64,000 nt of DNA from assembly GCF_006345805.1 (NCBI RefSeq), contig NC_043014.1, forward strand, positions 11,160,001-11,224,000. The letters run 5' to 3'. The stretch comes from Octopus sinensis. Lineage: Eukaryota. Both the position numbers and the translations under genes were made by a program. Below the pieces are notes generated by a model. The model did not search any database. It was not told the DNA's origin and saw only the letters and a list, made by a program, of their open reading frames with translations. Below, piece by piece: positions 19,191 through 63,062 of this stretch (positions are counted from its first letter, which is position 1; each line of letters starts with the position of its first letter).

Positions 19191-19282
<92 letters not shown>

Positions 19283-19522: not shown

Positions 19523-19584
<62 letters not shown>

Positions 19585-19620: not shown

Positions 19621-19707
19621 ATAAGTAGAAGGTAGATAAGAAGAAAAATGGAAAAATTAATTTTAACTCTTCAGCCTTTAAACCAACCATATCCAGCCCA
19701 AATATTC

Positions 19708-22537: not shown

Positions 22538-22593
<56 letters not shown>

Positions 22594-22630
22594 TCCATTT
22601 CATTCCTGTCACTTTTCTTTCTTTCTTCCT
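22150..22630. repeat. (CTTT)n pyrimidine-rich low-complexity block
   Basis: Direct inspection. Confidence 0.9.
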
Positions 22631-22820
22631 CCTTTACTCTTTTACTTGTTTCAGTCATTTGACTGTGGCCATGCTGGAGCACCGCCTTTAGTCAAGCAAA
22701 TCGACCCCAGGATTTATTCTTTGTAAGCCTAGTACTTATTCTATCGGTCTCTTTTGCCGAACTGCTAAGTTATGGGGACGTAAACACACCAGCATCGGTT
22801 GTCAAGTGATGTTGGGGGGA

Positions 22821-23582: not shown

Positions 23583-23682
23583 NNNNNNNNNNNNNNNNNN
23601 NNNNNNNNNNNNNNNNNNNNNNNNNNNNNNNNNNNNNNNNNNNNNNNNNNNNNNNNNNNNNNNNNNNNNNNNNNNNNNNNNN
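23583..23682. other. Assembly gap (100 N)
   Basis: Run of N. Confidence 1.
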
Positions 23683-23920: not shown

Positions 23921-24160
23921 CGGTGTTCAAAAGTCTCTCCGCAATGAAATTTTTTCACCCTTTGCATCACCATGGTGCTAGTGTACGAGTTTTTCGGTCA
24001 ACGGATTATTTCGAAGGGACTTTGACCACCAAGATCCCCTGATTTAACACCGCCAGACTTTTTTTTTCTTTTTGTCTGGGGAGCAAGTAAAGGATCAGTG
24101 TACAAGAATCGCTCGAAAACCATTAAATACATACTGCGAAGAGACTTTTTGAACACCCTG
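23921..24160 (+). mobile_element. Internally deleted Tc1/mariner derivative (MITE)
   Basis: TIRs (g)gtgttcaaaagtctct / agagactttttgaacaccctg-TA. Internal remnant encodes (W)PPRSPDLTPPDF. Confidence 0.7.
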
Positions 24161-24199
24161 TAGATAGATATACATGTGTGTATATATATCTATATGCAT

Positions 24200-24440
24200 A
24201 TAGATAAATACATACATACATACATACATGCATACATACATACATACATACATACATACATACATGCATACATACATACATACATACATACATGCATACA
24301 TACATACATACATACGTACATACATACATGCATACATACATACATATATACATACATACATACATGCATACATGCATACATGCATACATACATACATACA
24401 TACATACATACATACATACATACATACATACATACATGTG
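24200..24440. repeat. (TACA)n microsatellite (others at ~24970-25070, 25265-25330, 25545-25615)
   Basis: Direct inspection. Confidence 0.95.
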
Positions 24441-24449
24441 TATTCTGAC

Positions 24450-28331: not shown

Positions 28332-28440
28332 ATAATATATATGTGCTATTAAGTTAGACATGGCCTGCGCCAATAATGGCCGAAACCTATCAAAGTATCA
28401 AGTATCAAAGTATATATATATATATACATATGCATACATA

Positions 28441-28477
<37 letters not shown>

Positions 28478-28612
28478 TATATACATATATATTATATATA
28501 CATATATTATATTGTATACATATATATATTACATATGCATAGTGTGTACGTATATATATATGTATATATATATATATATATATATCTATATACATATGTA
28601 TGTATGCATATG

Positions 28613-28669
<57 letters not shown>

Positions 28670-28747
28670 CATATGTATGTATGCATATGTATATACATAT
28701 ACACACACACATATACATATATATATATGTATGTACGCTAATATATA

Positions 28748-28802
<55 letters not shown>

Positions 28803-28861
28803 GTATGCATATGTATATACATATATATATATACACACACATACATATGTTTGTATGCATG

Positions 28862-28892
<31 letters not shown>

Positions 28893-29100
28893 ACACACAC
28901 ATACATATACATATGTATGTATACTAATATATATATATATATATATACACATATATGTATATATATATATACATATATATATATACACACATATACTTCC
29001 ATAGTCTGTATATATATATATCTTTACAAAGACGTATACATATACATACACACACACATATTCATATGTATAGACATAGACATACACACATAGACATGCA
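28240..29100. repeat. Long (TA)n/(TG)n degenerate microsatellite
   Basis: Direct inspection. Confidence 0.95.
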
Positions 29101-29554
29101 CATTTATAGATTCTAACAAGAAAAAACAAAACTCAGCAACAGACCAGGAAGTTTCTCTTTAAGACGGATCGGTTGGCGACACATTACACTAACTTTCTTT
29201 TCAATTGACATTTCACAGCAATAAAACAGTTTATTCTCCGCGAAAGGTTGTCAGTAAATGTCAGAGGAAATTCCTTATATGTTTAACATAATGATTTTTT
29301 CTCGGTGGTTTTTTTTTATTTAATGGAGGGGGGGGGGTTCTTAAGAGTCACTTAACAGCAATTTTCTTTCCTGTTTTCTGTTTTTTTGCTGAAAATCTGT
29401 CTTCCACCAAATGTAGCGATCTTATATATCTCGATCTAATTTCTTTTCTTTGTGGGGGTTTTTTTTCTCTCGTTATGTATAAATAAATGGATTGTGTCTG
29501 TGATTGCGTGGATGTACATGTGGTTTCTCTTCGATTCTCCCACTCTCTCTCTCC

Positions 29555-30329: not shown

Positions 30330-31046
30330 CGAGTTTGTTTTAGTGACGAGGCGACTTTCATGTTTCAGGAAAATTAAACAGACACAATGTAAGAATCTAG
30401 GGATCAGAACACCCCTATATGACTAGGGAGCTTCAACGAGATAGTCCAAAAGTGCATGTGTGGTGTGGAATCATGTGCAATCGAATAATTGGTCCATTTT
30501 TCTTCAACGAGGCAACAATTACTGCAGATGTTTACCTCGACCTTCTGACCGAATATGTGGCACCACAACTGATTGATTTACAACCAGCCATCATTTTCCA
30601 GCAAGATGGTGCACCACCACATTGGGGACGGCATGTTCGTCAATTCCTCAATCAAACATTTCCTGACCGATGGATTGGAAGGGATGGGCCAATTCCATGG
30701 CCACTGCGTTTGCCAGATATCACTCCCTTGGACTTCTTTTTATGGAGATATGTAAAAGATATCGTGTATCAAACAAAGATATGGGACAATACTGACTTGA
30801 AGCAAAGGATTCGTAATGCCATTGCCACCGTTGATGAGGCTATCCTACAGCGAATATGGCAAGAAATCCAGTACCGTCTTGATGTGCTTCGCATAACTAA
30901 TGGTGCCCATATTGAGGTCTATTAAATAACAGTTAAAAAACTTTAATAAACAATTATTACAATAAAACAAACCTGGTTAAGATATCTTGTCAACTGCCTT
31001 TGTAATAAAATTTTTAAATTGTAAAGAGACTTTATGGACACCCTGT
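30330..31046 (+). mobile_element. 5'-truncated DD41D (rosa/VS-type) Tc1/mariner transposase fragment with 3' TIR
   Basis: FSDEATFH...KVHVWCG...FQQDGAPPHW...WPLRLPDITPLDFFLW, with 41 residues between the second and third Asp. The TIR ends aagagactttatggacaccctg-TA. Confidence 0.85.
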
Positions 31047-31751: not shown

Positions 31752-32881
31752 TTATGCGGAGCTGGGAGCTGTGAAGCTTCTAACAAGGAGATTTCTAAGA
31801 CCCCTATCTTTTTTTAAAAGACAGGAGAGGCGGTGTGGAAAAGATAGGGCGGTTGTCGGGTCAGAAAGAAGAGTGCGAAAGTTGTGGGTGAGTTTGTGCT
31901 TTAGAGGGTGGATGGACGGGTGGTAGGTGATAGAGAGTGAAATACGGTCGGTGGAAGCGCATGAAAGCGGTAGGAGAGCTGCGGTGCGGTTGATGGCTCG
32001 GGCTCGGTGGAGCGCCGGGTCGACAACTGATAGAGGATACCTTCGATTTAGAAAAAACTGTCGCATCGTTTTGCAATGGGATTCGAAATCCGAATCGATG
32101 CTGCAAAGTCGTCGAAGGCGAAGAAATTGATAGAAAAGTATGGCATATTTAATGTGTTTGAGGTGAGAGGAAGAGTAGTGGAAGTAGGAGTGGAAGTCGG
32201 TAGGTTTATAGTAGACAGAGGTGGAGAGGTGGGTATTGTGTATTTTGACGGATTTGTCAAAAAAGCAAACAGAAGTATCAGATATGGTGTGGGTGAATTC
32301 CAAGGCTGGGTGAAAAGTGTTAACGAAAGAAATAAAACCGTTGAGCTGTTGTCTGTTAAAGCTTTTGCCGCCAATGCAGTCGTCAATTTTACGACCATAA
32401 AGCGCTGGGATGGGTCCAGGGAAGTGCGCAAAGATTTGCTCCTCTACTTAACCTACAAAGAGGTTAGCATAATTGGGGTCTATCCAGGTGCCCATAGAAA
32501 CACCGCTGACTTGCTTATAGAATTCACCAGAGAAGGAAGATCAATTGAGTGTTAAGACGAGCTCAGCTAGGCGGAAGAGTGTATTAGTACAGAAGGACAG
32601 TCTAAGAAGTGTTTAAGGGCTAGTAGACCGTCGTTGTGAGGGATGACTGTGTACAAAGATTTAATGTCCATGGTGAAAAGGACTTTGGATTGACCAGATG
32701 GAAAAGAGAATGCTTTCAAGAGGTGTGGTACATGGTTACGGTCTTTTATATGCGAAGGTAGAGCAGTGACGAGAAGGGACAAAAGTTTGTCGCGATAGGA
32801 AGATAAAAGTTGTGGGGCAATTGCAAGCAGCGACAATAGGGCAGCCGAGATTATCTTGTTTATGTATGTATTCTCATGCAT
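31752..32881 (-). pseudogene. Penelope-like element reverse transcriptase, frameshifted
   Basis: Motifs LFTMDIKSLYTVIPH..GLLAL, KQVSGVSMGT..PNYANLF, RKIDD (RYIDD) and thumb YYKPTDFHSY...QFLRLRRLCS across several frames. No GIY-YIG domain is visible. Confidence 0.85.
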
Positions 32882-45948: not shown

Positions 45949-46469
45949 TATAATGGGCTTCACAGAGTTCCTGTCAGCCAAATTCACTCACAAGACATTG
46001 ATCAGCTCAGCTACAGTAGAAGACATTTGATGAAGGTACACTGAAGTAGGATTGAACCCGAAACCTATGGTAGCAAAGTAGGCTTCTTAACCACACAGCT
46101 ATGACTGCACACTTTGTTTTGTTGTTGTTTTTTTTTTAACAACAATTAAATGCTTTAAATATTTTTTAATTAAGTGAAGTTTATTTTTGCGGTATTATTG
46201 ATAATGTCATTTAATTGCTCTCAGGCAATTTAAAATTTCTTCTGCTTTTTTAAAATTTGCACTTAAAATCGTAAAATGTATTCATATATATTTTGAATCA
46301 TAAGTGATTCAAATAATTAATATTCAAACATCATTATGCTCGGCAGCTTTTAAACTAAGTAACACCAGCATAACACCACTGTATATCTACCAATATGTGT
46401 GTGTATATATATATATATACACACACACATATATGTATATATATATATACATGTACACATATAGATATG

Positions 46470-46522
<53 letters not shown>

Positions 46523-46607
46523 ATGCATATATTTACATATATATATATACATTTACATACATATAAACACATATATATATATATATGCATATACATATGT
46601 GTGTGTG

Positions 46608-46647
<40 letters not shown>

Positions 46648-47186
46648 ATGTGCAGACAATTCACCAACAATTCCCACATGGCCACAGCCTCAACACTGGA
46701 GATCTACATCACGTGCCTGGAGGGGGGGGGTGCTACCCTGGGTCAAGAGGGTGGCTGCTGGAACACCCTATGTCTGGCCTTCCTAACACCAACATATATA
46801 TATCATATATATAAGAGAGGGAGATTACAAACAAGAAAGGAATATTTCAAACACAGTAAAGCCATGAAAACAGCAGAAATATTAATTCCTGGTTTAAAAT
46901 ATTACTTTCTTGACTGTAAAATACAAAACACATTCAACACTTCTAAAGTTTGTTTACAAAACATTGTTGTTGCATATATATAATGCATATCTATCTATCG
47001 CTCTCTCTCTATATATATATGTATATATACAAACTGAGATAGGGGTTGTAAATGCAACCCTCCATGGGATAACATATATCCAATATACTGCTAGTCTCTT
47101 ATGTGGTGGTTTAATAAAGTATGTGATAGAGTATTATCTGATAATTGATATTTGATTTAGATGTATTTCTCCATTTTCTTATCTTG

Positions 47187-50829: not shown

Positions 50830-52025
50830 CAAGTTGTTTGAACCTCCAAATAAATTAACCTGAAATTTTGGTTTTAAAACATTTTTTTTTTTTGTAAGTT
50901 TTAATGTAAAGTAACAAATGGAATTATTTATTTATAAGCATGTTTTACATAATTGAAGGAGTCAGCTTCAGGCAAGTTCTTCTTTTTTACCTCTTCTTCT
51001 TCTTCATCTTCTTCCCATGTCATCAACCTGAATAATTTAGAAGTAAGAGTTATCTTACCCTAGAATTTTGACTTTTTTTAACCTTATCTCTTCATACAAA
51101 TAGTTCCCATTGACAAAAGCTTAGGCTAAATCATAGAATATATATACACATTCACAAACATCATACTTTTCTCAGTATGACGACTGAAAAGAAATACTGA
51201 TAAACTGTCACAGAATCTCAGAAATGATATCAAGGATTATAATCATGGACAATTGAGATCTGTTCACTACCAGCAGGACCTGCCCCGTAATGTAAAATGT
51301 AAAATGTATATACAAGTGTATGCACGTAAAAGACCCCAGATTTAGATAAATGGGTTTTATATACTTGTGGTTAACATTTTACCTTTTCGCCATTAAAAAG
51401 GATGAAAATAATAAATATGAAGGTATTTTTTATGGCCCCTTCAAAAACGTTATGCACAGGGATTAAACTAAAATAAGCAGATATTAACACAGTTATTGAG
51501 TATTGAAAATGTTAAGGGTGAAAGAAATCAATGTCTTTCTCTCTAAGGGTTTAAAAAAAAAATGTTCAACTTACTTTAAAGACACCTGCTCTATATTGTT
51601 TAATTAAAGAGAACATTATCAGTGGAGGAGAGTAATAATTGCTTATAAAAATAGTTTTTTACAAAATAATCCAGGAGAGATAGGAGGGTGGAGGAACGGG
51701 GTGGGTAGGTGGAAAAATCTGAATGAATATATCGGGTAAAGAAAAAAAAAAAAATGGAATTTGTATTGCAGCAGCTTTTTTTTTTTTAACGTTTGTTTGA
51801 AAGAAAAGTTCCGAGTTAAATATAATTAAGACTTTAAAAAAAAAAAAAAAAAGAAAAAAGTTACTGACAAATTTTGAATTTCCAAGAAAGATTTGTAATA
51901 TTTTCGTGTGCTAATTAGGCTTTTATATTTAAAATCTTCTAGTATGTGTGTATTTTGTATTATTATTATTATTATTATTTTTTTTTTTTATTTTTATTTT
52001 TTTTTTTTTTGGAGTGTAATGTCTT
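50830..52025 (-). other. Putative 3' UTR of the giant zinc-finger gene
   Basis: Largely TE-free AT-rich sequence directly after the stop, with AATAAA motifs about 30 nt downstream (plus-strand tttatt at ~51987-51998). The extent is a guess. Confidence 0.4.
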
Positions 52026-54581
52026 TCAAGGCGAGGACTCGTTCTGATGATGACCGAAGTCCCTCGCTTGCTTCATGATACCTTCTTTTTTAAACTGGCT
52101 GAATGCCTGCCTCTTTAGGGGCTGCGGCAAGCTGAGCGCTTCCACGACGCGCTTGTCTTCCTTATGTTTTAGCTTAATGTGCCTCGTTAGCTTCGCCTGC
52201 ATCACGCCACAGAAAGGACACTGTCGGGACGGCTTTTTGTAGCTCTTCATCTTTCTGAAATCGTTGAGGTCACAGCTGCCGCCAATATCGACATTGGCAT
52301 TAAGGCAGTCCCACGATATCTCCCCTTTGTCAGTACCGTGACCCCCACCATCGAAACCAATCGTCTCGCTGTCTTCCAAGCCAGCGGCAGCCTGGTCCCG
52401 CTCGCAGCTCTCACAACTGTAGCTTCCACTGTTGCTATGACAACTACAAACTGAAGTCCCCAACCTCGCATTGTTATGACACAATTCACCAGCATTGCTG
52501 CTACTACTACTACTACAACTGCCACTACAACTACCACCACTACTACTACTACTACTACTGCTGCTGCTACTACTACTACTACAACTACTGCTGTTACTAT
52601 TGTTACTGTTTCCTGTACAACAGGTATTAATATTCCCTGCTATACTAGTACTACTACCCATACTACCGCTATTGCTATTACTACTACTACTACAAGTAAT
52701 ATTGCAACTGTTACTCGTACTACTACTACTACTACTACTGCTGCTGATGCTGCTACTGGTGTTCACAAATGGCATATGAGATAAACTCATCGAGGACGAG
52801 CTGATTATTTTTTGTTGTTGCTGCTGTTGTTGTTGGTGTTGTTGTTGTTGTGGCGGTGGTGGTAGTGGTGGTGGTGGTGGTTGCGGTAGTGAGGGCGGTG
52901 GCAGAAGAGACGACGGTGAGAGCATTGACGTTGCTGGAGGTAGAGACGTTGATGGAGGTGGCACTGGTGGTATTGACGGTGGCGGTGGTACTGATGGCTG
53001 TGGTAGTAGTGGTGGTGGCGGCGCTGCTACTGGCGCCGGTGGTGGTGGTGGTGGTGCTGGCAGCGATGGTGTCGACTGGACGCCCGCGGCGGCACACCCC
53101 CCACCGGCAACTCCGCTGTCAGCGCTGAGTCCACATCGCTGACCGCTGGTGTTGCCACCACCACCACCACTACTACTACTACTATTATTACTACTACTAC
53201 TACTACTATTATTACTACAACTACTACTACTGCTAGTAGTAATAGCACTACTACCACTATTATTATTCTTATAAGGAAGGTTGCACGTTTCCCCGATAGC
53301 GGAAGGGGACAGATTTGGTAGCCCGTAGGGTGGAGGCACTGACAAGCCAGCTGAAGGATGATGGTAGGCACTATTCTTTGAAGATGATGCCGAAGATGAT
53401 GTCGGAGAAGGGGAAGGAGAATTAAAAGAGTTTGGAGATGGAGGAATGGGATTGGCAGCCAAGTTCTGATACATTGGTGATCTGTGTGGATAGTTCTGAC
53501 CAGGTATACTGCTTTGGTTTGCGTTATTGTTAGTAGCACTCATGGTGCCTCCCTGCCCAGTGAAGTAAGCAGACCCAGTACTGCTGTCACAGAAGCTGTC
53601 TGTGTGTCCAGGATCAGAGTGCAGCCGAGCGGCACGACTTCGTGACATTGCGGAACCCATGACGCTCTGGTCTGGAATATTGTAGGACATTACGGGTGAG
53701 AATCCGTCCTCAGCGTTTGTAAAGCTTTGGCAATTCCTTGCGGAAATTGGTGCAGAGTGCTGTTGTTGTTGTTGAAGAAGAGGTGGTGGATGTGGAGGTG
53801 GTGGCGGTGGCGGCTGCAATGTCTGTGAGCAGTGCCGCCCGACCACAGAACTGTTTGGAGGGGGCGTGAAGGGCGAATGGTTGAAATCGAGGGGAGAAGT
53901 CGATGAGGGAGATGGAGATGTGCTGTTGAACTTTTGACGTTTTATAGACGTGACCCCTTCTTCTAAGACTCCAATGGCACAAGGCTGGCTACCTTCAGCG
54001 TGGGACCACTTGTTTTGGACACCATTAATCTCATACAGAGGTGATGACATTATTGCTGGAGATGAAGAAGGCATGTTTACTGGAGACTGAGACGACGGCG
54101 CCGGTGGCGGTAACAACATAAAGTTTTCTGTCCCAGAAAATGCTAGACTGGACATGGTTTCGGGCTTGCCGGCCTTTATATATAAAGACGGTTGCTGACC
54201 GCTACCTTGGTATAAGTTTTCCTGTGAAAGATATTGTTGTTGGTGCTGCTGTTGTTGTTGTTGTTGTTCCTGCTGATGCTGGTGGTAATGTTGCTGTTGA
54301 TGATGATGCTGCTGTTGTTGATGAAGATGGTGTTGTTGTTGTTGTTGTTGTTGATGATGATGATGATGCTGATGTTGTTGTTGTTGATGATGATGACTTA
54401 GCGAATTTGGTCTCTTGTGGTTCCAGGAGGAATCGCAAGGCGAACTCTCTTCGACAGAACCGCAACTGAAAGTGGAAACGCCAAACGGCTGCATAGAGGA
54501 ATTCCTGGGACTGTTATCGACCGGTTCCATCCGAAAGTCCATGTGGCATCCGTCGACGTTGGACGCAAACGGGTTGCCACA
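52026..54581 (-). CDS. 3' part of the same giant zinc-finger protein (polyQ/H, polyP, polyS linkers plus eighth module; stop TGA at 52026-52028)
   Basis: 838-aa ORF (52026-54542) whose frame stays open upstream to ~54968. It ends in YKKPSRQCPFCGVMQAKLTRHIKLKHKEDKRVVEALSLPQPLKRQAFSQFKKEG, the same module as the upstream ORF. Confidence 0.85.
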   Translation of the reverse strand, partial: CGNPFASNVDGCHMDFRMEPVDNSPRNSSMQPFGVSTFSCGSVEESSPCDSSWNHKRPNSLSHHHQQQQHQHHHHHQQQQQQQHHLHQQQQHHHQQQHYHQHQQEQQQQQQQHQQQYLSQENLYQGSGQQPSLYIKAGKPETMSSLAFSGTENFMLLPPPAPSSQSPVNMPSSSPAIMSSPLYEINGVQNKWSHAEGSQPCAIGVLEEGVTSIKRQKFNSTSPSPSSTSPLDFNHSPFTPPPNSSVVGRHCSQTLQPPPPPPPHPPPLLQQQQQHSAPISARNCQSFTNAEDGFSPVMSYNIPDQSVMGSAMSRSRAARLHSDPGHTDSFCDSSTGSAYFTGQGGTMSATNNNANQSSIPGQNYPHRSPMYQNLAANPIPPSPNSFNSPSPSPTSSSASSSKNSAYHHPSAGLSVPPPYGLPNLSPSAIGETCNLPYKNNNSGSSAITTSSSSSCSNNSSSSSSNNSSSSSGGGGGNTSGQRCGLSADSGVAGGGCAAAGVQSTPSLPAPPPPPPAPVAAPPPPLLPQPSVPPPPSIPPVPPPSTSLPPATSMLSPSSLLPPPSLPQPPPPPLPPPPQQQQHQQQQQQQQKIISSSSMSLSHMPFVNTSSSISSSSSSSSSTSNSCNITCSSSSNSNSGSMGSSTSIAGNINTCCTGNSNNSNSSSCSSSSSSSSSSSSSSGGSCSGSCSSSSSSNAGELCHNNARLGTSVCSCHSNSGSYSCESCERDQAAAGLEDSETIGFDGGGHGTDKGEISWDCLNANVDIGGSCDLNDFRKMKSYKKPSRQCPFCGVMQAKLTRHIKLKHKEDKRVVEALSLPQPLKRQAFSQFKKEGIMKQARDFGHHQNESSP

Positions 54582-57500
54582 CCGAACATGTCCGTGTCTT
54601 GCGTTGCGAGATATTGCTGAGTTTGTAGCTGCTGCTGCTGATGATGCTGATGTTGCTGTTGTTGATGTTGCTGTTGCTGCTGCTGATGTTGTTGTTGCTG
54701 CTGCTGCTGATGCTGGTGCTGCTGCTGTTGATGTTGTTGTTGCTGCTGCTGATGTTGGTGTTGCTGCTGCTGATGTTGTTGCTGCTGCTGATGCTGCTGC
54801 CGCTGTTGTTGTTGATGTTGTTGGTGTTGATGCTGCTGCTGCTGCCGCTGTTGGTGTTGCTGCTGCTGTTGTTGTTGTTGTTGTTGTTGTTGTTGGTGTG
54901 GTTCTTGCTCTGGTTGCGTAGAAGCAGCAATATAAGACGAGAAGTCCTTGTAGGGAGACATCATGGCATTAGAACTGGAACCAGGAGGGGCATCGAATTC
55001 CTCTTTCAGCAATGATGTTGGCAGTGATATCTGATTCAAAGAAGCCATAGTTTCAGACGACTGTTCCGTCTCAGCCTCGGTACTCAGCTCAAGATCCGGA
55101 ACAGAATTCGTCAGCCAATCAGAAGCATTGAAATTGGACAGAGCTGAACTACAGCCAATCATATGCATTTGTAAGACATCTTTCTCGTAATATGTGTCAC
55201 AGAGAGGACAAAGTACTTTTGAAACCGAACCTTTTTGGTTGGTGATGTCGTTTCGAACACTGGAACTGGTGTTCGTTACCATGTTATTTTCATTAGCTCG
55301 CTTTAGTTCGTTTGCCAGCCCTTCTTCTTTAAACTGGTGAAATGCATCTCGCTGAAGGTTTGGAGGCAATTTTAGTGCTTCCTTGACACGTTCCTCTTCT
55401 TTGTGCCGTAACTGAATATGGCGTTTTAATTTGGCTTGTTTCACACCACAGAATGGACATGGTGTAGGAGGTTTCCGATTCGAAGAGGTGCCTCTTCCGG
55501 AATTAAGGCTGACGTTGTTGCGTCCGCCGGTGTTTGTTCCCAAACGTCTCGGTGATGAGGACTGCGAACTTTTCGGTCCACTCGTGGTTGCACTGCATCC
55601 ATTGCCACTAGAACTACCCCCAACAGCCGTGATGCTGTCGTTAACTGGCTGGTAGTTTACTACAGATATTCCCTGAGAATCATATGATAAATACATATTT
55701 GCAGGATCAAATTTGAAGTCTTCGTCCGGGAGTGGTGGCAATATGTTGGTCTTATTTGAAGCTACTGGTGACAAAGAAGTGTTAGTATCTTTAGACGGGA
55801 ACATGGGTGGCAAGCCGTAAGACGGCTGCGTTTCTAAACCATAAAGTGTTATCTGAGACTCGGTCCTACTAATATCTGGATGAGAAATGAAAGAGGAATT
55901 CACTTTGGAATCAACCATGGCATTCAACTCAGGATATTTAGAAAAGTGGTTATCTCGACCAGAATCATCTTGAATAAGGGAAGACATTTGTTCCATGGCT
56001 AAAGCACTAAAAGTCAAGTCTTCAACTGGGGAACATGGTTTTTCCGTTTTGATATTAATATTATTTAGAAAAAAAGTGTCTTGGGAAGGGCAAGTAAATT
56101 TGTTATTTTTCACTTCAGAATTATCCATTGGTTCCAAAAGTTTTGGAAGAGATTCATGGCCAGATTTACCAGTGTTCATTTGATAAGAACAAAACTGTTG
56201 GTTTCTGGTAGTGTCCAGACAACCTGTTCCAAATGGAGTTTCAATTGAATTGCTTTGTCTGTTGCACTCAGCCTGGCTTGACCAAACCTCAGGTGATGGG
56301 TCGGAAATACCTTTCATCTCAGGATGAACAAGACTTTCGTTTGCAATCTGCTTCTCTGAAAACCTGTCGATTAGGGTGTGACTCGGAATAATGTGTTCGT
56401 TCAAACCCATAATTTTGGACGATTCTCTAGCTTGAGCAAGAGATTCGTTTTCCAAAGGAGACTTTTTCGTTTTTGCAGAAGAAGCAGATGATTTCAACAG
56501 GTTTTCATCAAATTCATTAATTGGTTTATGCTGCTGCTGCTGCTGTTGCCTACAGTCCATATCTAAAACAACAGAACCGGTCGCAGCAGGTAATCTATAG
56601 CTTCTATTGGAATGGTTTTCAGGTTTGTCAATTTTTCTACCACCGAACGGTTTCTGTTCCTGATTCTCATGATGGTTCGAATGAAAAGCCAGGAACTTCT
56701 GGCTCTCTTGGTCGTGCCTATCTTCTTTATGCCTTTCATGTAGGTTATCACCAGGGACATCAGCACTACAACAAGATGATGGTTCTTGTTGATTTCTAAC
56801 AACAGAACTAGAAGAATTTCTTTTAAAATCAAAATCAGAAACTACAGACATGATATTCTCAACATTTCTATCTCCTTCATTAACAGTTTTCTTAATCGGT
56901 CTGACAGAATTCCCTTTCTGTAACATAACAGCGGGGTTCTTTGGTGAACTGGTGACATTATTTGCTAACTGATAACAATCTGTTGACACAGCTGCAAATG
57001 GAGATAAACTGGTGCCCCGGTTGCAACTGTTCATGGCACCGCTGCCATGATTTATGTTTCTGTTTGACTGCAAAGTAGATACAGCTGCACTGTCTGCACA
57101 TTTGAACTTGCACTTTGCAATGTGTCTTCTAAGCGTGCTTTTCGCAAAAGGCTTCTTGCAGTGTGGACAGTTAGAACCTTGCGAGTGCAAAGGTCTTCCA
57201 CCACCAACAAGCTTTCTGGATGTCCTTCTCTCAATATCTTCGATAGCATCGCTGTCCATGAACATCGAAGACTCGCCCATTCGACGGAGTTTATCTTTCA
57301 TGATGCCTTCTCGTTTGAAATGACTAAAGGCCCTCAGCTGCAGAAGTTGTGGTAACTGTAGGACAGCTTTTACTCTCCTGTCCCCTTTGTGTTTTAATTT
57401 AATATGACGGGTTAGTTTCGCCTGCATTACACCACAAAATGGGCAAGGCCGAGAAGGCCTCTTGTACACCCTCAGAGCATTATTGGACTGTTGCTGGACT

Positions 57501-60500
57501 GTGTTATTCATTTTGTTTTCCTTTGTAATTGATGACTGTTCTTCCAAAGATAGATTAAATTTAGCTTCCTGCTCAGGGACATCATCTGGAATGAGACTAC
57601 AATCATTGTCTGAATGATCAGATAGGCTTCTTTTAGATCTTACAGAATCTGGCATTTCAGGAACTCTTTTAGGGTCCACAATGGTTAAGGATTCTTCAAT
57701 TATGGTAATGTCTGGGACTTCCTTTCTGTTTTCAAAATCCATATTTCTGTGGTTGCTATCAGAACTATCACAAAGTCTTTTGATGGTAGCATGGCTATTT
57801 TCACTATCTGATTTCATTGGTGCATCTAATCGAATAATATACACCTCTTTGGTTTCATCACTGTTGACAACCTCAACAGATGTTTGGGGGAGGTCCTCAT
57901 TTGACTCAAACACAGAACCGTCGTCATCATTTTTATCCATGCCATTCTCATAATTATCCACTGTATCAGGTTTGGAGGGGAGTTCTGTCACTGGCTGGAG
58001 TGTAACCGTATCAGTTAATTGCAGGTGCGCACGGCCACAGAGAAACATATGATCACTTAGGCTCTCCATTGGTATAATTTGATCACAACCACTACACACG
58101 GCATTCTGTTGACAAGATGGCAACACCTGACCAACTATCTTGTGTTCTTTGTCAAACCAAGTTTCCATTTGAGATAATTTATTTTTCAAAATGCCTTCTT
58201 TCTTAAACTGATTAAATGCGTGCCTTTGCGATGGCTGGGATAAACTCATCGCCTCCTTCACGCGATCTTCATCTTTATGTTTCAGTTTGATGTGCCGAGT
58301 GAGTTTAGCCTGCATTACACCACAAAACGGACATGGACGGGAGGGTTTCTTGTAAGATCTACCAAAATAACTTTGATTACATTTAACAATGGAACTACTT
58401 GAAGGTTTTGAACCATTCAACGGAAGATGTGGCTTAGATGGATTATTGACAGAAACTACATCACTTTTATCAGCATCATCAAAAGCATCAGAAACAGGAA
58501 GTGAAACACTCATTTCCTGTTTAAGGAGAGAATTGGTTTCAATTAGCTCTCCGTCTTCTAAATTTTCAGATTTACATTCTGTATTCCTCAGAGTTTGTTC
58601 ATAGTCTTTTAGTATATTCTCCTGAGTGTTATCTATATCATGGTTTGATTCAGCGTTGGGATCACACGGGTTTTCGGTGATTCCATCCTCAAAAGAATTA
58701 TCTTCTAAATCAGGTTTGTATTTCACCTCAAAATCCTCGCTTGACACAGCAGCTATTGGTTCAATTCGGATAGGGTTACTTTGGAATTTGATATCATCTT
58801 CATGTTGCAATGTATTTTCAGCACTATAATTTTCATCTTCTAAATCTTCAACTTCTTTTTTCAACTTTAAATTCATAAAAGGCCCCGAATTTGGCTCCTT
58901 GGCATCATCATCAGAGCAAGGAATATTTGATTCCTGTTGATATTGCCAAGTAGAATTAAAAGATTGATCAGTTTCTTTTAACGAAGGAGAAGACACGGAA
59001 ATACTTTTGTTTGGCCCATCACCAGGAAAACTTTCAACAGGGGAATGTGAGAACATTTCTTGCTCATAGGACCAATCACTTGTATTAAAATTAGAAAGTG
59101 CAAGGCTGCAACACTGCATATGTTCCTTCATTGCATCTTTCTTGACAAATACATTACAACTACTGCAGACAAGCCATGGAGAGGAATCAGACTGGAATGT
59201 ACACTCAGGAATTAATTCCTGATACTGCTCTTGTTCTGTTAACCTTTTAGCATTTTCTTTCATGATGCCTTCTTTCTTAAACTGGTTGAAAATCCTACGT
59301 TGCATTGACTGTGGCAACCGCAGTGTTTCTTTAACGCGGTCTTCATCCTTGTGTTTTAACTTAATATGCCTCGTTAATTTTGCTTGCATAATACCACAGA
59401 ATAAACATGGTCGAGACGGTTTCTTGTAAGTTCTTGGTTTGTTGCTAGCAAAACCTGATGGTTCATCCTCTATCGTTATGACGTTCGCCTGACTCTTGAC
59501 TGATAGATGTTTATCAAATACCGAAGAGCCTGAGTTACAGTTGTGACCAGTAGTTACATCTTCATCAGATGAATCTGAGATTGAAACAGGAGACATTAAT
59601 TGTATGTCTTCGTTAGCGACCTCCTCTTTCACAATCCCACTGCTAATATTATTATTATTATTATTATTATTATCATTATTATTATTATTACCATCATTGT
59701 AAGTTTCCATTTCCTCTGAGATTGATGACAGAAGTTGCTTCTCAGAGTTTTGGTCTCTTGTTTGCTGGAATATATCGTCATTTAATTCAGACTTTAAAAA
59801 GAAAGCCGTTGCTTGGTTGGCATTAGATAGTTGAACACTGTAGTCAGTCACATCATCAGAACGGTCGCAAGAATCTGGTGGAATTTCAAGAATTTCTTCC
59901 TTTAATACAATAGTCTCTGAATTTAGAAGATGCTGTTTATTTGAGGAATCGCTTGCTTCCGCGAGGTCTATTTCCTCTATCAACTTTACTTCACTGTCTT
60001 CAACATCGACTTCTCCTTCCGGTGCAATGAAAATGGTTTTGATTTTCTTGCTACTTGGTGGCGCAATATCATATTCTTGAATATTCTGCAACTCACTGAT
60101 GTCTAAGACACCTCGACGACTATCGTTTTCATCATTTCTCTCAACAGGAGATACAAAAGATGGTGGTGGTGATGATGATGAAGTAGACATGGCTGCTAAA
60201 GAAGATGGCTGGGTATCAACATTATCAAAGGATTTGGAACTACTGTTGTCAGAATTTGGTCCTTGGCTAGAAAGCTGACTGGAAGTATCAAGGGAGTATG
60301 GAACAGATTTACAGGTAACAATATGTTGGTTGATGTCTTCTTTGGGCTGAGATTCTTTACAATAAGGACACACAACCATTGATATATGTCCATAAGGAAT
60401 TCTCTCTATAATAAGGCAATCAGATTCAGAAAGACTGTTAATTCTACGCATATTTTCCTTCAGAATTCCTTGTCGTTTGAATTCATTAAAAGCATTACGC

Positions 60501-62914
60501 TGTTCGTGCAGAGGTAGTTTTAATGCCTGTTTTACACACTCTTCGTGTTTATGTTTCAACTTGATATGACGACTCAATTTCGCCTGCATTATTCCACAGA
60601 ACGGGCACGGACGTGCAGGACGTTTGTAAATTTTGCCTTCATCAATGTTCTCCACAGCTTTGGGATTAGGTAACTTGTACGGGCCATTTCCAAAACGATG
60701 GGTAACATTTGATGGTTTCAAAGACATTTCTTTGTCTGCGTGGTGTTGGATATAGATGCTATTTAGATCACTATCCAGGTAGCTATTTACTTTTTGTTTG
60801 ACAAAGCTGCTATCATCTTCAGAGGAAAATGGTTTAGAAAACGGTGATAAGGCAACAGTTTCAAGAGTGCTTGTGTTTTTAGAATGAGGTGAAGTGTGGA
60901 ACTCTTTCAATGAAGAGCAATGCAAGCTTTCTTTACAATGTGGAGTTTTGATTATAACAGTTTCCAACTTGTTATGGAGTGGGTCACACTCTGAACTAAC
61001 AAATTCAAGGCTTTTACTCTTTTGAATATGGTCAGTTTTACTATATAGGTCAGAATCTGATTTACCAAAGTTCAGCGTTACCTTGTCTTTGCTTTGTTCA
61101 ATCAGAATCTCATCCACATAAATAGAATCCGTATCACTAAATTTAAGTACATCTTTTAATTTATCTTCACGATTTGTAGTTTTTACAGAAAAAGACACTT
61201 CTAGATCGTTTCTTTCGTCTTCACAGTACTCTAAATTGTCTGGACACACTCTGGTATTAAAATAATCTCTCTCAACAGTCGGTGCTAATTCCAAACTTTC
61301 AGCATTTCCTGTCGATTTAGTGTGGTGTACATCTGATATGCATGGTTTCCGAAGAGCAGCATTATTGTTTGGTAAGTCTTTTCTCCTGTTATTCCTTGTT
61401 TTGTTTAAAATGCCAATCTTGCAGATATTATGCCCTTCTTCAACCAAATTTACATCTAAACTAGGAACTTGGCATTGCAAGTTCTGTTTAGAAGAATTAC
61501 TTTCACAACCTTGTTTATCAGCTAAATCTAATGTCAACACAGATCCATTTGAAGCAGCAAGTGGCCTGCAAGTCTTCAGATGCTGTGATAAGACATCCTT
61601 GTGAACAGAATAATTACAGTGTGGACAGCACAGGATAACGTTATCGTGGAGGCTAGAAATAGCAGCAGCAAAAGACTTCTTGACAAGTTTGTTACACTTT
61701 GAGAGCTCGGATAGGCGTCGGATGTTTTGTTTTTTGATGCCATCTTTCTTCATTTCATCAAAGGCGTTCCTCTGGAATAACTTTGGCAGAGCCACAGCCT
61801 GTTGAACCCGTAATTCATCTTTGTGTTTTAATTGGATATGACGAGTTAAATTGGATTGCATCAACCCACAGAAAAAACAAGGCCGCGGCAGTTTCTTGTA
61901 GAAAGCTTTCGATACCATATTACCGATACGACTGTGATTCTGGGACTTCCGAAATGATACAGCGTTACTAATTCCTTCTTTTTTAAACTTATTGAAAGCA
62001 TCTCGTTGCTGTGGTTTTGGCAGTTGAAGAGCTTTGAGGACACGCTCTTCATTTCGATGCTTCAGTTGTATGTGCCGTGCTAATTTCGCCTGAGTTATTC
62101 CACAAAACAAACAAGGCCACACATTCTTTTGGTTATACTTGCTTGTTTTTGAACGGCTGCAAGAATTAGTATAACTTTTACCATTATGTGACTTGATACC
62201 ATTTCTTGTGATATTCCTGTGAATAGTTTTATTAACAGTCTTGTTGTGGGTCTGAATCAAGTCATCTGTAAAAGGGGATTGAGAAGCATCGGTGACATCC
62301 TTTGGTGCAGCTTCTAAAGGCAGAGAACTGGATTTCGCTTGCGGAAACCCGTGTCCTTTAATATACATTTCATTTTGATTTTGGAAAATAACACAACAGT
62401 CTTCTTCTGAAGAATCTAAAACAGATATTGGTGATGAATCAGCAGAATTTGAAACTGGTTGAGGAGATGATCTGTTAAATTGCTCTAAGCCATTAACTGG
62501 TTTATCTTTGGTTGAGTCTTTGGTGCTAGAAAGGGAATTGGTTGCTTTTAATGATTTGAGCAATTCCTTTGAAGGAAGAACAGATGTCCCAGATTTGCAG
62601 CTGATAGAATGAGTTTCAAAAAGATCTTTTTCAAAATATCCCTGACAATTACAACACTTCATGAGGTCTTCGATTGTCAGTTGTTTATCAGCAGCCATTC
62701 TGAATTCAAGCAAAACACTTTGATCGCAGATGTTGTTCAATGATTTCTGAACCTCACAGTTTTCTGCAAGTAGAAATGGTTTCGGAATGAAGTTTAAGTC
62801 CAGAGTCGAAGATCCAGGTTTAGAAACAAGTAACTCCTTCACTGATTCATCACTAAGTCGAATCACCTTCAGGTGGTCTGTGAGTTTCTGTTGCATAACT
62901 TTGGCTCCGAGCAA
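54398..62914 (-). CDS. 5' major part of a giant multi-zinc-finger protein (7 intact CxxC-H-H modules plus 1 degenerate; 2838-aa ORF, probably frameshifted into the next ORF near 54582)
   Basis: 8.5-kb stop-free ORF with balanced composition. It repeats the motif (Y)K(K/R)PxRPCPFCG(V/I)MQAKLTRHIKLKHKxExRVxxALxLPxxxQRxAFxxFKKEG seven times, most copies followed by CxxC-x11-12-H-x3-C. Ends in a polyQ tract. Confidence 0.9.
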   Translation of the reverse strand: MLGAKVMQQKLTDHLKVIRLSDESVKELLVSKPGSSTLDLNFIPKPFLLAENCEVQKSLNNICDQSVLLEFRMAADKQLTIEDLMKCCNCQGYFEKDLFETHSISCKSGTSVLPSKELLKSLKATNSLSSTKDSTKDKPVNGLEQFNRSSPQPVSNSADSSPISVLDSSEEDCCVIFQNQNEMYIKGHGFPQAKSSSLPLEAAPKDVTDASQSPFTDDLIQTHNKTVNKTIHRNITRNGIKSHNGKSYTNSCSRSKTSKYNQKNVWPCLFCGITQAKLARHIQLKHRNEERVLKALQLPKPQQRDAFNKFKKEGISNAVSFRKSQNHSRIGNMVSKAFYKKLPRPCFFCGLMQSNLTRHIQLKHKDELRVQQAVALPKLFQRNAFDEMKKDGIKKQNIRRLSELSKCNKLVKKSFAAAISSLHDNVILCCPHCNYSVHKDVLSQHLKTCRPLAASNGSVLTLDLADKQGCESNSSKQNLQCQVPSLDVNLVEEGHNICKIGILNKTRNNRRKDLPNNNAALRKPCISDVHHTKSTGNAESLELAPTVERDYFNTRVCPDNLEYCEDERNDLEVSFSVKTTNREDKLKDVLKFSDTDSIYVDEILIEQSKDKVTLNFGKSDSDLYSKTDHIQKSKSLEFVSSECDPLHNKLETVIIKTPHCKESLHCSSLKEFHTSPHSKNTSTLETVALSPFSKPFSSEDDSSFVKQKVNSYLDSDLNSIYIQHHADKEMSLKPSNVTHRFGNGPYKLPNPKAVENIDEGKIYKRPARPCPFCGIMQAKLSRHIKLKHKHEECVKQALKLPLHEQRNAFNEFKRQGILKENMRRINSLSESDCLIIERIPYGHISMVVCPYCKESQPKEDINQHIVTCKSVPYSLDTSSQLSSQGPNSDNSSSKSFDNVDTQPSSLAAMSTSSSSPPPSFVSPVERNDENDSRRGVLDISELQNIQEYDIAPPSSKKIKTIFIAPEGEVDVEDSEVKLIEEIDLAEASDSSNKQHLLNSETIVLKEEILEIPPDSCDRSDDVTDYSVQLSNANQATAFFLKSELNDDIFQQTRDQNSEKQLLSSISEEMETYNDGNNNNNDNNNNNNNNISSGIVKEEVANEDIQLMSPVSISDSSDEDVTTGHNCNSGSSVFDKHLSVKSQANVITIEDEPSGFASNKPRTYKKPSRPCLFCGIMQAKLTRHIKLKHKDEDRVKETLRLPQSMQRRIFNQFKKEGIMKENAKRLTEQEQYQELIPECTFQSDSSPWLVCSSCNVFVKKDAMKEHMQCCSLALSNFNTSDWSYEQEMFSHSPVESFPGDGPNKSISVSSPSLKETDQSFNSTWQYQQESNIPCSDDDAKEPNSGPFMNLKLKKEVEDLEDENYSAENTLQHEDDIKFQSNPIRIEPIAAVSSEDFEVKYKPDLEDNSFEDGITENPCDPNAESNHDIDNTQENILKDYEQTLRNTECKSENLEDGELIETNSLLKQEMSVSLPVSDAFDDADKSDVVSVNNPSKPHLPLNGSKPSSSSIVKCNQSYFGRSYKKPSRPCPFCGVMQAKLTRHIKLKHKDEDRVKEAMSLSQPSQRHAFNQFKKEGILKNKLSQMETWFDKEHKIVGQVLPSCQQNAVCSGCDQIIPMESLSDHMFLCGRAHLQLTDTVTLQPVTELPSKPDTVDNYENGMDKNDDDGSVFESNEDLPQTSVEVVNSDETKEVYIIRLDAPMKSDSENSHATIKRLCDSSDSNHRNMDFENRKEVPDITIIEESLTIVDPKRVPEMPDSVRSKRSLSDHSDNDCSLIPDDVPEQEAKFNLSLEEQSSITKENKMNNTVQQQSNNALRVYKRPSRPCPFCGVMQAKLTRHIKLKHKGDRRVKAVLQLPQLLQLRAFSHFKREGIMKDKLRRMGESSMFMDSDAIEDIERRTSRKLVGGGRPLHSQGSNCPHCKKPFAKSTLRRHIAKCKFKCADSAAVSTLQSNRNINHGSGAMNSCNRGTSLSPFAAVSTDCYQLANNVTSSPKNPAVMLQKGNSVRPIKKTVNEGDRNVENIMSVVSDFDFKRNSSSSVVRNQQEPSSCCSADVPGDNLHERHKEDRHDQESQKFLAFHSNHHENQEQKPFGGRKIDKPENHSNRSYRLPAATGSVVLDMDCRQQQQQQHKPINEFDENLLKSSASSAKTKKSPLENESLAQARESSKIMGLNEHIIPSHTLIDRFSEKQIANESLVHPEMKGISDPSPEVWSSQAECNRQSNSIETPFGTGCLDTTRNQQFCSYQMNTGKSGHESLPKLLEPMDNSEVKNNKFTCPSQDTFFLNNINIKTEKPCSPVEDLTFSALAMEQMSSLIQDDSGRDNHFSKYPELNAMVDSKVNSSFISHPDISRTESQITLYGLETQPSYGLPPMFPSKDTNTSLSPVASNKTNILPPLPDEDFKFDPANMYLSYDSQGISVVNYQPVNDSITAVGGSSSGNGCSATTSGPKSSQSSSPRRLGTNTGGRNNVSLNSGRGTSSNRKPPTPCPFCGVKQAKLKRHIQLRHKEEERVKEALKLPPNLQRDAFHQFKEEGLANELKRANENNMVTNTSSSVRNDITNQKGSVSKVLCPLCDTYYEKDVLQMHMIGCSSALSNFNASDWLTNSVPDLELSTEAETEQSSETMASLNQISLPTSLLKEEFDAPPGSSSNAMMSPYKDFSSYIAASTQPEQEPHQQQQQQQQQQQQQHQQRQQQQHQHQQHQQQQRQQHQQQQQHQQQQHQHQQQQQQHQQQQHQHQQQQQQQHQQQQQQHQQQQHQHHQQQQLQTQQYLATQDTDMFGVATRLRPTSTDATWTFGWNRSITVPGIPLCSRLAFPLSVAVLSKRVRLAIPPGTTRDQIR

Positions 62915-63032
62915 CGTTTTTTTTGTTGCTACAGCCTTTGGTGAGGCTAATACTTAGCTCAGGGGATTGCCAGCAGTAACGATTCAGCGAGGGCTGGACG
63001 TTGAAACATGTGTTGATCAATACAGGAGACAT

Positions 63033-63062
63033 CTAAAAAGAAAAAAACAGACAAAATGAAAA
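63033..63062 (-). other. Splice acceptor (polypyrimidine tract + AG) opening the giant exon
   Basis: Minus strand reads ttttcattttgtctgtttttttctttttag|ATGTCTCCT. Upstream sequence is intron-like and contains a SINE at 63120-63330. Confidence 0.65.

What the first reader, a model, noticed from the sequence alone, without database searches (positions are those of the whole stretch)
52026..62914. Giant (~3,600 aa) single-exon protein built from 8+1 copies of an unusual zinc-finger/helical module
Seen: modules at about 61965-62125, 61730-61900, 60460-60630, 59260-59430, 58185-58357, 57295-57470, 55320-55480 and 52070-52245. The consensus is KPxRPCPFCGxMQAKLTRHIKLKHKxExRVxxALxLPxxxQRxAFxxFKKEG. 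Six are followed by a second finger such as CPYC..KEDINQHIVTC or CPHC..KSTLRRHIAKC. Linkers are long, acidic/Ser-rich and disordered. This is not a classical C2H2-linker (TGEKP) array. Recollection, not a search result: a single copy of a similar module occurs in animal SET-domain/tyrosine-recombinase-associated, transposon-like proteins. No recombinase or SET domain is visible here. Inference: a domesticated, multimerised DNA/chromatin-binding module, possibly lineage-specific and uncharacterised.
Basis: partly seen in the sequence, partly recalled or inferred. Interest (0 to 1): 0.8.

Follow-up and report, generated by a model that had tools for sequence, protein, structure and literature searches.

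The report
Giant protein of recombinase-derived zinc-finger units
The window holds a real, selectively constrained gene for a roughly 3,600-residue protein that strings together nine copies of an unnamed two-zinc-site domain, otherwise found once per protein at the front of tyrosine-recombinase mobile elements of many animals; it has no recombinase part, so it looks like a captured DNA-binding domain multiplied into a host protein.

Summary
The repeats are real. Eight full copies of the CPFCG-MQAKLTRHIKLKH module lie at the stated coordinates. A ninth, N-terminal copy has lost its first-site cysteines. Six modules are followed about 80 residues later by a C2HC finger.

A profile built only from foreign proteins finds all nine units (i-E 3e-8 to 2e-32) and nothing else in the 64 kb.

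The region is not one ORF. A 2,838-codon and an 838-codon frame overlap out of phase between two polyQ tracts, and the true 5' end is unresolved.

The unit matches no Pfam family and no solved structure. It is nevertheless widespread: 597 protein clusters from molluscs, echinoderms, annelids, a tunicate, an isopod and zebrafish. In those proteins it usually occurs once, ahead of a helical domain and an intact tyrosine-recombinase domain, sometimes behind a SET domain. None of that is present in the window.

Synonymous sites between modules are saturated while replacements are few. The last module is 95-98% identical in its core to one from a very distant species.

Best reading: a domesticated, multiplied recombinase accessory zinc-finger domain acting as a multivalent nucleic-acid or chromatin binder. 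Binding itself is untested.

The parts
54398..62914 (-). ORF-A (2,838 codons; the frame is open from 62953). It holds units 0-7 and ends in a polyQ tract.
52026..54542 (-). ORF-B (838 codons; the frame is open from 54968). It holds a polyQ/H tract, a Ser/Pro/Gln-rich low-complexity region and module 8, 12 residues before the stop at 52028-52026.
62588..62902 (-). Unit 0. The first zinc site is degenerate (LLGAKVMQQKLTDHLKVIR: both Cys and the last His lost). The C2HC finger at 62597-62656 is intact.
   Evidence: i-E 2.6e-8 with the foreign-only profile
61970..62134 (-). Module 1 (finger 1 plus helices). No C2HC finger follows before module 2.
61562..61900 (-). Unit 2 (module 2 plus C2HC at 61568-61627)
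   Evidence: i-E 2e-24
60302..60628 (-). Unit 3 (module 3 plus C2HC at 60311-60370)
   Evidence: i-E 5e-30
59099..59428 (-). Unit 4 (module 4 plus C2HC at 59108-59167). This is the unit that was modelled.
   Evidence: i-E 2e-32; AF2 pLDDT 90.6
58028..58354 (-). Unit 5 (module 5 plus C2HC at 58037-58096)
57098..57466 (-). Unit 6 (module 6 plus C2HC at 57110-57169)
55139..55480 (-). Unit 7 (module 7 plus C2HC at 55151-55210)
54615..54907 (-). PolyQ(H) tract 1 (CAG/CAA repeats), read as Gln in frame A
54400..54640 (-). Unique stretch that contains the frame break. Codon-usage log-odds favour frame A down to about 54611 and frame B from about 54578. The AA/CCC runs at 54575-54571 are a candidate 1-nt assembly error.
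54234..54396 (-). PolyQ/H tract 2, read as Gln/His in frame B
52077..52241 (-). Module 8, at the C-terminus, with no second finger. Its core is 95-98% identical to a fragment from another species.
63030..63060 (-). Polypyrimidine tract plus AG (63034-63033), followed directly by ATG (63032-63030), in a frame offset from ORF-A. This is a possible exon start or initiator, unresolved. The A8 run at 62924-62917 lies between it and ORF-A.
   Evidence: sequence reading; inference

Best explanation
This is a host protein-coding gene, not a mobile element. It was assembled by repeated internal duplication of a roughly 110-residue bipartite zinc-binding unit.

The unit has four parts in order:
- a basic arm (YKKPSRP);
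- a short beta-beta-alpha finger (C-x2-C-x9-H-x4-H);
- two helices, the second about 25 residues long;
- a C-x2-C-x11-H-x3-C finger about 80 residues after the first.

Elsewhere in animals this unit sits once, at the front of tyrosine-recombinase element proteins. The typical order is [SET, optional], unit, helical middle domain, recombinase. By its position it is most likely the accessory DNA-recognition domain of the recombinase, comparable to the arm-binding N-domain of lambda integrase or the BED and THAP fingers of transposases.

In the window the catalytic part is gone. Nine units are instead strung on long, acidic, Ser/Gln/Pro-rich, probably disordered linkers. The protein would therefore act as a multivalent reader. 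Each basic unit would bind a short nucleic-acid site on its own, as single-finger-plus-basic-arm domains can. The array would bridge or coat clustered sites, and the linkers would supply spacing and perhaps partner recruitment. Likely targets are sequences related to the ends of the parent element family. That points to element repression or chromatin organisation.

Shown: the units, their homology, the absence of catalytic domains, purifying selection, and the predicted fold.

Inferred: zinc binding, DNA as the ligand, autonomy of each unit, and the targets.
For: Reality and homology of the units. A profile built from foreign proteins alone finds nine units and nothing else in the window. The module profile hits 597 clusters at E<=1e-3 and 156 at E<=1e-10. 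Cys/His at both sites are invariant across 44 units from many phyla. In 127 of 205 foreign modules a C2HC finger follows at the same distance.

Parent architecture. The consensus of 45 long homologues runs unit, then helical domain, then RRGGE..GKG..RHR..GHS..Y. That last part is a tyrosine-recombinase domain. SET is present in 4 of 45. A complete 689-residue example is P0161. Several near-identical copies in one isopod genome fit a mobile element.

Loss of catalysis here. No middle or recombinase domain is found in any frame, and there is no Pfam domain in either ORF.

Constraint. Module-versus-module pS is 0.92 against pN 0.23. Module 8 against the other species gives pS 0.96 and pN 0.076. 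The linker is collinear but only about 32% identical, with many gaps.

Origin by internal duplication. Window modules are closest to each other (61-80% identity in the 56-residue core) or to that orthologue's single module (57-77%; module 8, 95-98%). Every other foreign module is at most 60% identical.

Fold. pLDDT is 90.6 for a whole unit, with two beta-beta-alpha-type zinc knuckles and a long helix.

Charge. Units carry +12.8 per 100 residues and linkers -3.9.

The uninterrupted 8.5-kb ORF in 37% GC DNA cannot be chance.
Against: No binding data of any kind exist. No solved structure or curated family resembles the whole unit, so ligand type cannot be transferred by homology. The best fold matches to the second finger include protein- and ubiquitin-binding fingers (Sgf11/Sgf73, RNF125, RAD18 UBZ), all non-significant.

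The reading frame is broken once as assembled, and the 5' end is unknown. The full-length product is therefore a reconstruction.

Only the last about 600 residues have a detected orthologue. Conservation of the nine-unit layout in other species is not shown.

The role of the unit in the parent elements is itself inferred from its position.
Confidence: 0.6

Rival explanations
1. The units are protein- or modification-binding modules (for example ubiquitin, histone or nucleosome readers) rather than DNA binders. The protein would then be a chromatin or signalling scaffold.
For: The C2HC finger's nearest, non-significant structural and sequence neighbours are Sgf11/Sgf73 of the SAGA deubiquitinase module, the RNF125 C2HC, the RAD18 UBZ and TRAF-type fingers. 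Some parent proteins carry a SET domain, which suggests a chromatin context. Long disordered linkers are typical of scaffolds.
Against: All those matches have E > 0.03 by sequence or > 0.7 by fold. The unit is strongly basic and has a conserved basic arm before finger 1. Its position ahead of a recombinase is where DNA-recognition domains sit.
Confidence: 0.2
2. The locus is a decaying gene or a pair of separate products. ORF-A ends at the stop at 54398. ORF-B is either untranslated or made on its own from the ATG at 54542. On this reading the frameshift is real, not an assembly error.
For: The two frames are genuinely out of phase in the sequence given. No mini-intron with a consensus-like donor restores the frame. 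ORF-B begins with an ATG.
Against: ORF-B is 2.5 kb of open frame and ends in a module whose core is 95-98% conserved, with saturated synonymous sites, against a distant species. It is therefore translated. The switch zone contains short homopolymers, and codon statistics change frame exactly there. A single break in 10.9 kb is what a one-base assembly error would give. The assembly is scaffolded, with a 100-N gap.
Confidence: 0.15
3. The region is part of, or a chimaera of, tandem copies of a tyrosine-recombinase element rather than a single host gene.
For: Some foreign multi-unit proteins look like gene models fused from tandem element copies. One example is P0009, with five about 484-residue repeats that each include the middle domain, followed by one recombinase.
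Against: The window has no middle or recombinase remnant between units in any frame. The linkers are unique and unrelated to each other (one search finds only simple repeats). Module DNA is only 56-72% identical, with saturated synonymous sites. The 8.5-kb frame is intact.
Confidence: 0.05

Closest known systems
Unnamed family of animal tyrosine-recombinase element proteins (for example P0161, 689 aa; Anneissia LOC117115204; Batillaria, Bulinus and Armadillidium hypothetical proteins)
   Same: They share the same bipartite zinc unit, with all eight zinc ligands and the basic arm conserved. Profile i-E values are 1e-18 to 2e-32.
   Different: They carry one unit, followed by a roughly 250-residue helical domain and a catalytically intact recombinase, sometimes with an N-terminal SET domain. 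The window protein has nine units, long disordered linkers and no catalytic domain.
Crypton DNA transposons and Crypton-derived genes (ZMYM2/3/4, WOC, QRICH1, KCTD1, KIAA1958; PMC3212892)
   Same: Cryptons are eukaryotic tyrosine-recombinase elements without reverse transcriptase. They show a precedent for domestication, and ZMYM/WOC proteins combine a zinc-finger array with element-derived sequence.
   Different: In those genes it is the recombinase-derived DUF3504 that was kept, and their fingers are MYM-type. Here the recombinase is lost and the element's own finger unit was multiplied. No DUF3504 or MYM match was seen in the window ORFs; among the homologues, the 12 recombinase domains scanned at E<=1 matched Phage_integrase (9 of 12) but not DUF3504. 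Whether the parent elements belong to Crypton in the strict sense was not established.
Transposase-derived DNA-binding domain arrays (ZBED proteins with several BED fingers; THAP and FLYWCH proteins)
   Same: The concept is the same: an element's DNA-recognition zinc domain is captured by the host, sometimes in several copies per protein.
   Different: The fold family and the parent enzyme class differ (DDE transposases versus tyrosine recombinase). No sequence or fold similarity was found.
Widely spaced or single autonomous C2H2 fingers (GAGA factor DNA-binding domain; WIZ)
   Same: A basic arm plus one beta-beta-alpha finger acting as a self-sufficient binding unit, with fingers separated by long linkers. 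There is a weak PDB sequence hit to GAGA factor covering arm plus finger (E=0.41).
   Different: The hit is not significant. The unit has a shorter Cys-to-His spacing (9 residues, not 12), two extra helices and a second C2HC site.
Pfam PF12013 (OrsD, formerly DUF3505): a fungal domain of about 114 residues described as two C2H2-like segments
   Same: Similar length and two-site layout. There are sub-threshold hits in 6 of 44 units (best E=0.0075) covering finger 1 and the helices.
   Different: The score for window unit 4, the one unit whose bit score was listed, is well below the curated cut-off (15.6 against 26.6 bits).

Membership tests
Classical Krueppel-type C2H2 zinc-finger arrays | C-x2-4-C-x12-H-x3-5-H fingers in tandem, joined by TGEKP-like 7-residue linkers | tested here: not met
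   Spacing is C-x2-C-x9-H-x4-H. Units are 78-660 residues apart. Pfam zf-C2H2 models are below cut-off.
Bipartite zinc unit of animal tyrosine-recombinase elements (unnamed; no Pfam entry) | Basic arm plus C2H2-like site plus two helices plus a C2HC site about 80 residues later, with all eight ligands conserved | tested here: met
   Six complete units, two with the first half only, and one with a degenerate first site. The foreign-only profile gives i-E 2.6e-8 to 1.9e-32.
Autonomous tyrosine-recombinase element (Crypton-like) | Encodes a tyrosine-recombinase catalytic domain (R..K..H-x-x-R..H/W..Y) | tested here: not met
   A profile of the middle and recombinase region finds nothing in six frames of the window. 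No Phage_integrase hit.
Autonomous tyrosine-recombinase element (Crypton-like) | Multi-copy in the genome with near-identical copies | not testable with these tools
   Only one 64-kb window of this genome is available, and there is no second copy within it.
Crypton-derived host genes (DUF3504 genes, ZMYM/WOC) | DUF3504 domain; MYM-type zinc fingers | tested here: not met
   Neither was detected in the window ORFs.
PF12013 OrsD/DUF3505 | Score at or above Pfam's gathering threshold (26.6 bits) | tested here: not met
   Window unit 4 scores 15.6 bits; 6 of 44 units give sub-threshold hits. Remote homology is not excluded.
SET-domain methyltransferases | SET domain | tested here: not met
   Absent from both ORFs. 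Present only in some homologues.
Conserved host gene (as opposed to neutral element relic) | Purifying selection, and an orthologue in another species at the same position in the protein | tested here: met
   pS 0.92 against pN 0.23 among modules. For module 8 against the Logan fragment, pS is 0.96 and pN 0.076, with the same C-terminal position and a collinear linker. Only the last roughly 600 residues could be compared.

The most novel reading that the evidence does not exclude
The bipartite unit is a new, structurally distinct DNA-recognition domain of a large, undescribed group of animal tyrosine-recombinase elements. This gene is a host-evolved 'poly-arm-binding' protein. Its nine units would recognise the subterminal sites of those elements, or host sites descended from them, to silence them or to organise chromatin. 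That would be a defence or architecture system analogous in logic to KRAB zinc-finger proteins, but built from a recombinase accessory domain and kept for hundreds of millions of years.
Probability: 0.2. Interest if true: 0.75.

Novelty: new variant of a known kind. Interest (0 to 1): 0.5.

Why it matters
Host capture of transposase DNA-binding domains is a well-known route to new regulators. The known cases come almost entirely from DDE transposases (BED, THAP, Pipsqueak, CENP-B). From tyrosine-recombinase elements, the known domestications kept the recombinase fold (DUF3504 genes).

Here the accessory zinc domain of such elements was kept instead, and multiplied ninefold.

The domain has no Pfam entry and no structural relative, yet it occurs from crinoids to zebrafish. 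It folds confidently in silico. A single roughly 110-residue unit is therefore an easy target for structure determination and for binding-site selection. Such work would also define how this element family finds its DNA.

Tried and rejected
The word-indexed protein search returned nothing useful in three attempts. The queries were the module alignment, residues 230-1072 of ORF-A, and de-repeated ORF-B. 'No hit' from that tool therefore says little about orthologues.

A mini-intron across the frame break was rejected. All 33 GT..AG pairs that restore the frame lack a GTRAGT-like donor and a pyrimidine tract.

The Logan orthologue contigs (L001, L002) start inside the second polyQ tract, so they cannot settle the break.

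PDB sequence searches with the module and unit profiles gave nothing below E=0.03. Foldseek against PDB (two models) and BFVD gave nothing at E<=0.001.

Pfam gave nothing above cut-off for the window ORFs, for the nearest multi-unit homologues or for 44 isolated units.

Literature searches found no description of the unit or the gene. Terms tried: Crypton, SET, tyrosine recombinase, octopus, mollusc, run accessions and the zebrafish gene name. The DUF3505 literature gave only fungal, element-associated mentions.

The identity of the host organism and of the runs ERR12370321 and ERR14857104 could not be determined.
Full report
**What is in the sequence**

On the minus strand, 52026-62914 is almost entirely open reading frame, but in two pieces: 54398-62914 (2,838 codons, frame A) and 52026-54542 (838 codons, frame B, offset by 2). 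The surrounding 50 kb is repeat-rich non-coding DNA of 29-42% GC, with microsatellites and a 100-N scaffold gap.

A strict pattern scan over all six frames finds eight copies of the module, all in these two frames, and none elsewhere. Sixteen positions are invariant among the eight copies.

Six modules (2 to 7) are followed 79-92 residues later by a C-x2-C-x11-H-x3-C finger. A seventh such finger sits near the N-terminus.

A profile of the complete unit, built from 38 proteins of other organisms only, recovers nine units in the window at i-E 2.6e-8 to 1.9e-32 and nothing else. The ninth, at 62588-62902, has a first site in which both cysteines and the second histidine are replaced, while its C2HC finger is intact.

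The layout is therefore:
- unit 0, with a degenerate first site;
- module 1, first half only;
- complete units 2 to 7;
- two polyQ tracts;
- a long Ser/Pro/Gln-rich region;
- module 8, twelve residues from the stop.

**The 'single exon' claim**

The two frames overlap by 145 nt. Frame B is open from 54968 and frame A until 54398. The CAG/CAA tract at 54615-54907 reads as polyGln only in frame A. The tract at 54234-54396 reads as polyGln/His only in frame B. The break must therefore lie in the unique 240 nt between them.

None of the 33 GT..AG pairs that would restore the frame has a consensus-like donor. A codon-usage log-odds scan favours frame A down to about 54611 and frame B from about 54578. 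Short homopolymers (AA, CCC at 54575-54571) lie at that point. One more base there would give ...DMFGVA-(T/N)-PFASNVDGCHMDFRMEPV.... This is inference: the evidence fits a one-base assembly error but does not prove it.

At the 5' end, frame A is closed by a stop at 62956-62954. A strong polypyrimidine-AG followed directly by ATG lies at 63034-63030 in another frame, separated from ORF-A by an A8 run at 62924-62917. The start therefore cannot be fixed from the window. If both breaks are artefacts, the product is about 3,650 residues.

**Real coding sequence under selection**

An 8.5-kb open frame in 37% GC DNA cannot arise by chance. Among the eight modules the proportion of synonymous differences is 0.92 on average, which is saturated, while that of replacement differences is 0.23. 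The copies are thus old and their protein sequence is maintained.

A fragment assembled from two unrelated public sequencing runs (P0158; loci L001 and L002) ends in the same way. It has a polyQ/H tract, a Ser/Pro-rich region and one module at the C-terminus. That module is 88% identical over 66 residues and 95-98% in the core, at only 77% DNA identity, with pS 0.96 and pN 0.076.

The linker aligns collinearly, but at about 32% identity with 26% gaps and a few conserved islands, once composition correction is switched off. This is the pattern of an orthologous gene with constrained domains and fast-evolving disordered spacers.

Window modules are 61-80% identical (56-residue core) to their nearest sister module and 57-77% identical to the orthologue's single module (module 8: 95-98%); for some modules the orthologue's module is as close as, or slightly closer than, the nearest sister. 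Every other foreign module is at most 60% identical. This indicates duplication within this gene lineage rather than repeated capture.

**What the unit is**

Neither ORF matches any Pfam family above threshold. The unit profile has no significant match in PDB sequences.

AlphaFold2 gives a confident model: pLDDT 79 for the module alone with eight sequences, and 90.6 (pTM 0.66) for a whole unit with 44 sequences. The model has a beta-hairpin plus helix, two further helices (the second about 25 residues), a less confident connector, and a second hairpin plus helix.

Foldseek finds no neighbour of the whole unit in PDB or in viral models. Only the individual fingers resemble known ones, and not significantly: Tramtrack and CTCF for the first, and Sgf11/Sgf73, RNF125, RAD18 and TRAF-type fingers for the second.

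The exhaustive profile search, in contrast, finds 597 protein clusters (156 at E<=1e-10). Named sources include a periwinkle, a sea slug, other gastropods, an oyster, a polychaete, a crinoid, a sea urchin, a tunicate, an isopod and zebrafish. All are 'uncharacterized' or carry transferred names such as 'setd8-a'.

All eight zinc ligands are invariant or nearly so across 44 units from these sources. In 127 of 205 foreign modules the C2HC finger follows at the same distance.

**The parent architecture**

In the longer single-unit proteins the unit is followed by a conserved helical region of about 250 residues, then by a domain with the consensus ..LTLFNARRGGEP..YQxGKG..ATxxRHRxST..HMGHS..NxNVYQ.

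This last domain is a tyrosine-recombinase catalytic domain. It matches Pfam Phage_integrase in 9 of 12 and archaeal XerA in PDB at E=7e-5. The Arg, Lys, His-x-x-Arg, His and Tyr positions are invariant or nearly so. Four of 45 also have an N-terminal SET domain.

P0161 is a complete 689-residue example on a 3.7-kb contig. The isopod genome holds several near-identical copies on different contigs. These are therefore element-type proteins, Crypton-like in lacking reverse transcriptase. They showed no DUF3504 match, so I do not file them under Crypton proper.

A profile of the middle and recombinase region finds nothing in any frame of the window.

**How it most likely works**

The unit precedes the recombinase's helical and catalytic domains. 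That is where lambda-type integrases carry their arm-binding domain and where transposases carry BED or THAP fingers.

It is strongly basic (K+R 22%, net +12.8 per 100 residues) and is preceded by a conserved basic arm (KKPxRP). Together these features resemble single-finger DNA-binding domains such as that of GAGA factor, to which there is only a weak, non-significant hit.

I therefore take each unit to be an autonomous nucleic-acid-binding domain and the whole protein to be a multivalent binder. Nine basic units are spaced by acidic, Ser-rich, low-hydrophobicity linkers of 150-770 residues plus polyQ.

The most economical target hypothesis is sequences related to the ends of the parent elements. 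That would give a repressor or a chromatin organiser.

The steps from 'zinc unit' to 'DNA', and from 'DNA' to 'element ends', are inferences. A protein- or ubiquitin-binding role for the C2HC half is the main rival.

**Comparison with known systems and novelty**

The kind of thing, a host protein built from a captured element DNA-binding domain, is well known. Smaller multi-unit proteins with this same unit exist elsewhere: three units in a tunicate and in a periwinkle, four or five in a polychaete, five in zebrafish. Some of these, such as P0009, may be fused tandem elements.

Three points are new:
- the domain family, which has no Pfam entry, no structure and no literature that I could find;
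- the source, the accessory domain of a tyrosine-recombinase element rather than of a DDE transposase, and rather than the recombinase fold itself as in the DUF3504 genes (PMC3212892);
- the scale, nine units in about 3,650 residues with deep conservation of at least the terminal unit.

I rate it a new variant of a known kind, of moderate interest.

**Limits**

- I could not verify the host taxon.
- I could not see the gene's 5' end.
- I could not test expression.
- I could not find orthologues of units 0 to 7. The word-indexed search tool failed even on a known positive.

Noticed in passing
window 52000-56000: GC content jumps to 0.46-0.50 in the 3' third of the gene, against 0.29-0.42 elsewhere in the window. 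This coincides with the CAG/CAA, AGC/TCN and CCN low-complexity coding tracts.
   Followed up: partly
window 30419-30925 (+): This 168-codon ORF (..DGAPPHW..WPxRLPDITPLDFFLW..) looks, from memory, like the C-terminal half of a mariner/Tc1-type transposase. Pfam gave no hit at E<=0.01, so the identification is untested.
   Followed up: partly
window 31752-32303 (-): This 183-codon ORF has a retroelement-like look (..YYKPTDxHSYxHYSSSH..). There was no Pfam hit at E<=0.01. It is probably an element fragment.
   Followed up: partly
window 23583-23682: A run of 100 N marks a scaffold gap. The assembly is therefore scaffolded and may carry local errors, which bears on the frame break at about 54,58x.
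   Followed up: no
window 18880-19741, 22122-22691, 24095-25326, 28376-29129, 46304-46814: Long microsatellite or simple-repeat stretches (CT-, TATG-, TA/TG-rich) generate spurious ORFs of 120-240 codons.
   Followed up: no
L003 10001-15217 (ENA ERZ25069853 ctg31256l), protein P0004: This is another long (1,738-codon) uninterrupted ORF from an unidentified organism. It has three modules of the same family, including an adjacent pair like window modules 1-2, long Ser/Asn/Thr-rich linkers, classical C2H2 fingers and no recombinase. It may be a second, independent or distantly orthologous 'recombinase-less' array.
   Followed up: partly
homologues P0002, P0003, P0008, P0017 (C-terminal regions): Several multi-unit homologues end in a short conserved motif (W..x..F..Y/W....G.LPGK.E.E.FL.......W..I..K..N). 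It resembles a small Myb/SANT- or MADF-like domain and is absent from the window protein. It was seen by eye only.
   Followed up: no
unit alignment A4 against Pfam: There are sub-threshold hits of 6 of 44 units to PF12013 (OrsD/DUF3505). That is a fungal two-zinc-site domain of similar length, which papers mention next to transposon fragments and subtelomeric helicases. This may be remote homology worth an HHpred test.
   Followed up: partly
window 51951-52010: An A-rich/T-rich simple tract lies immediately after the stop codon of ORF-B, on the gene strand (A-runs and AAT repeats). It marks the start of the 3' UTR. No polyadenylation signal was looked for.
   Followed up: no
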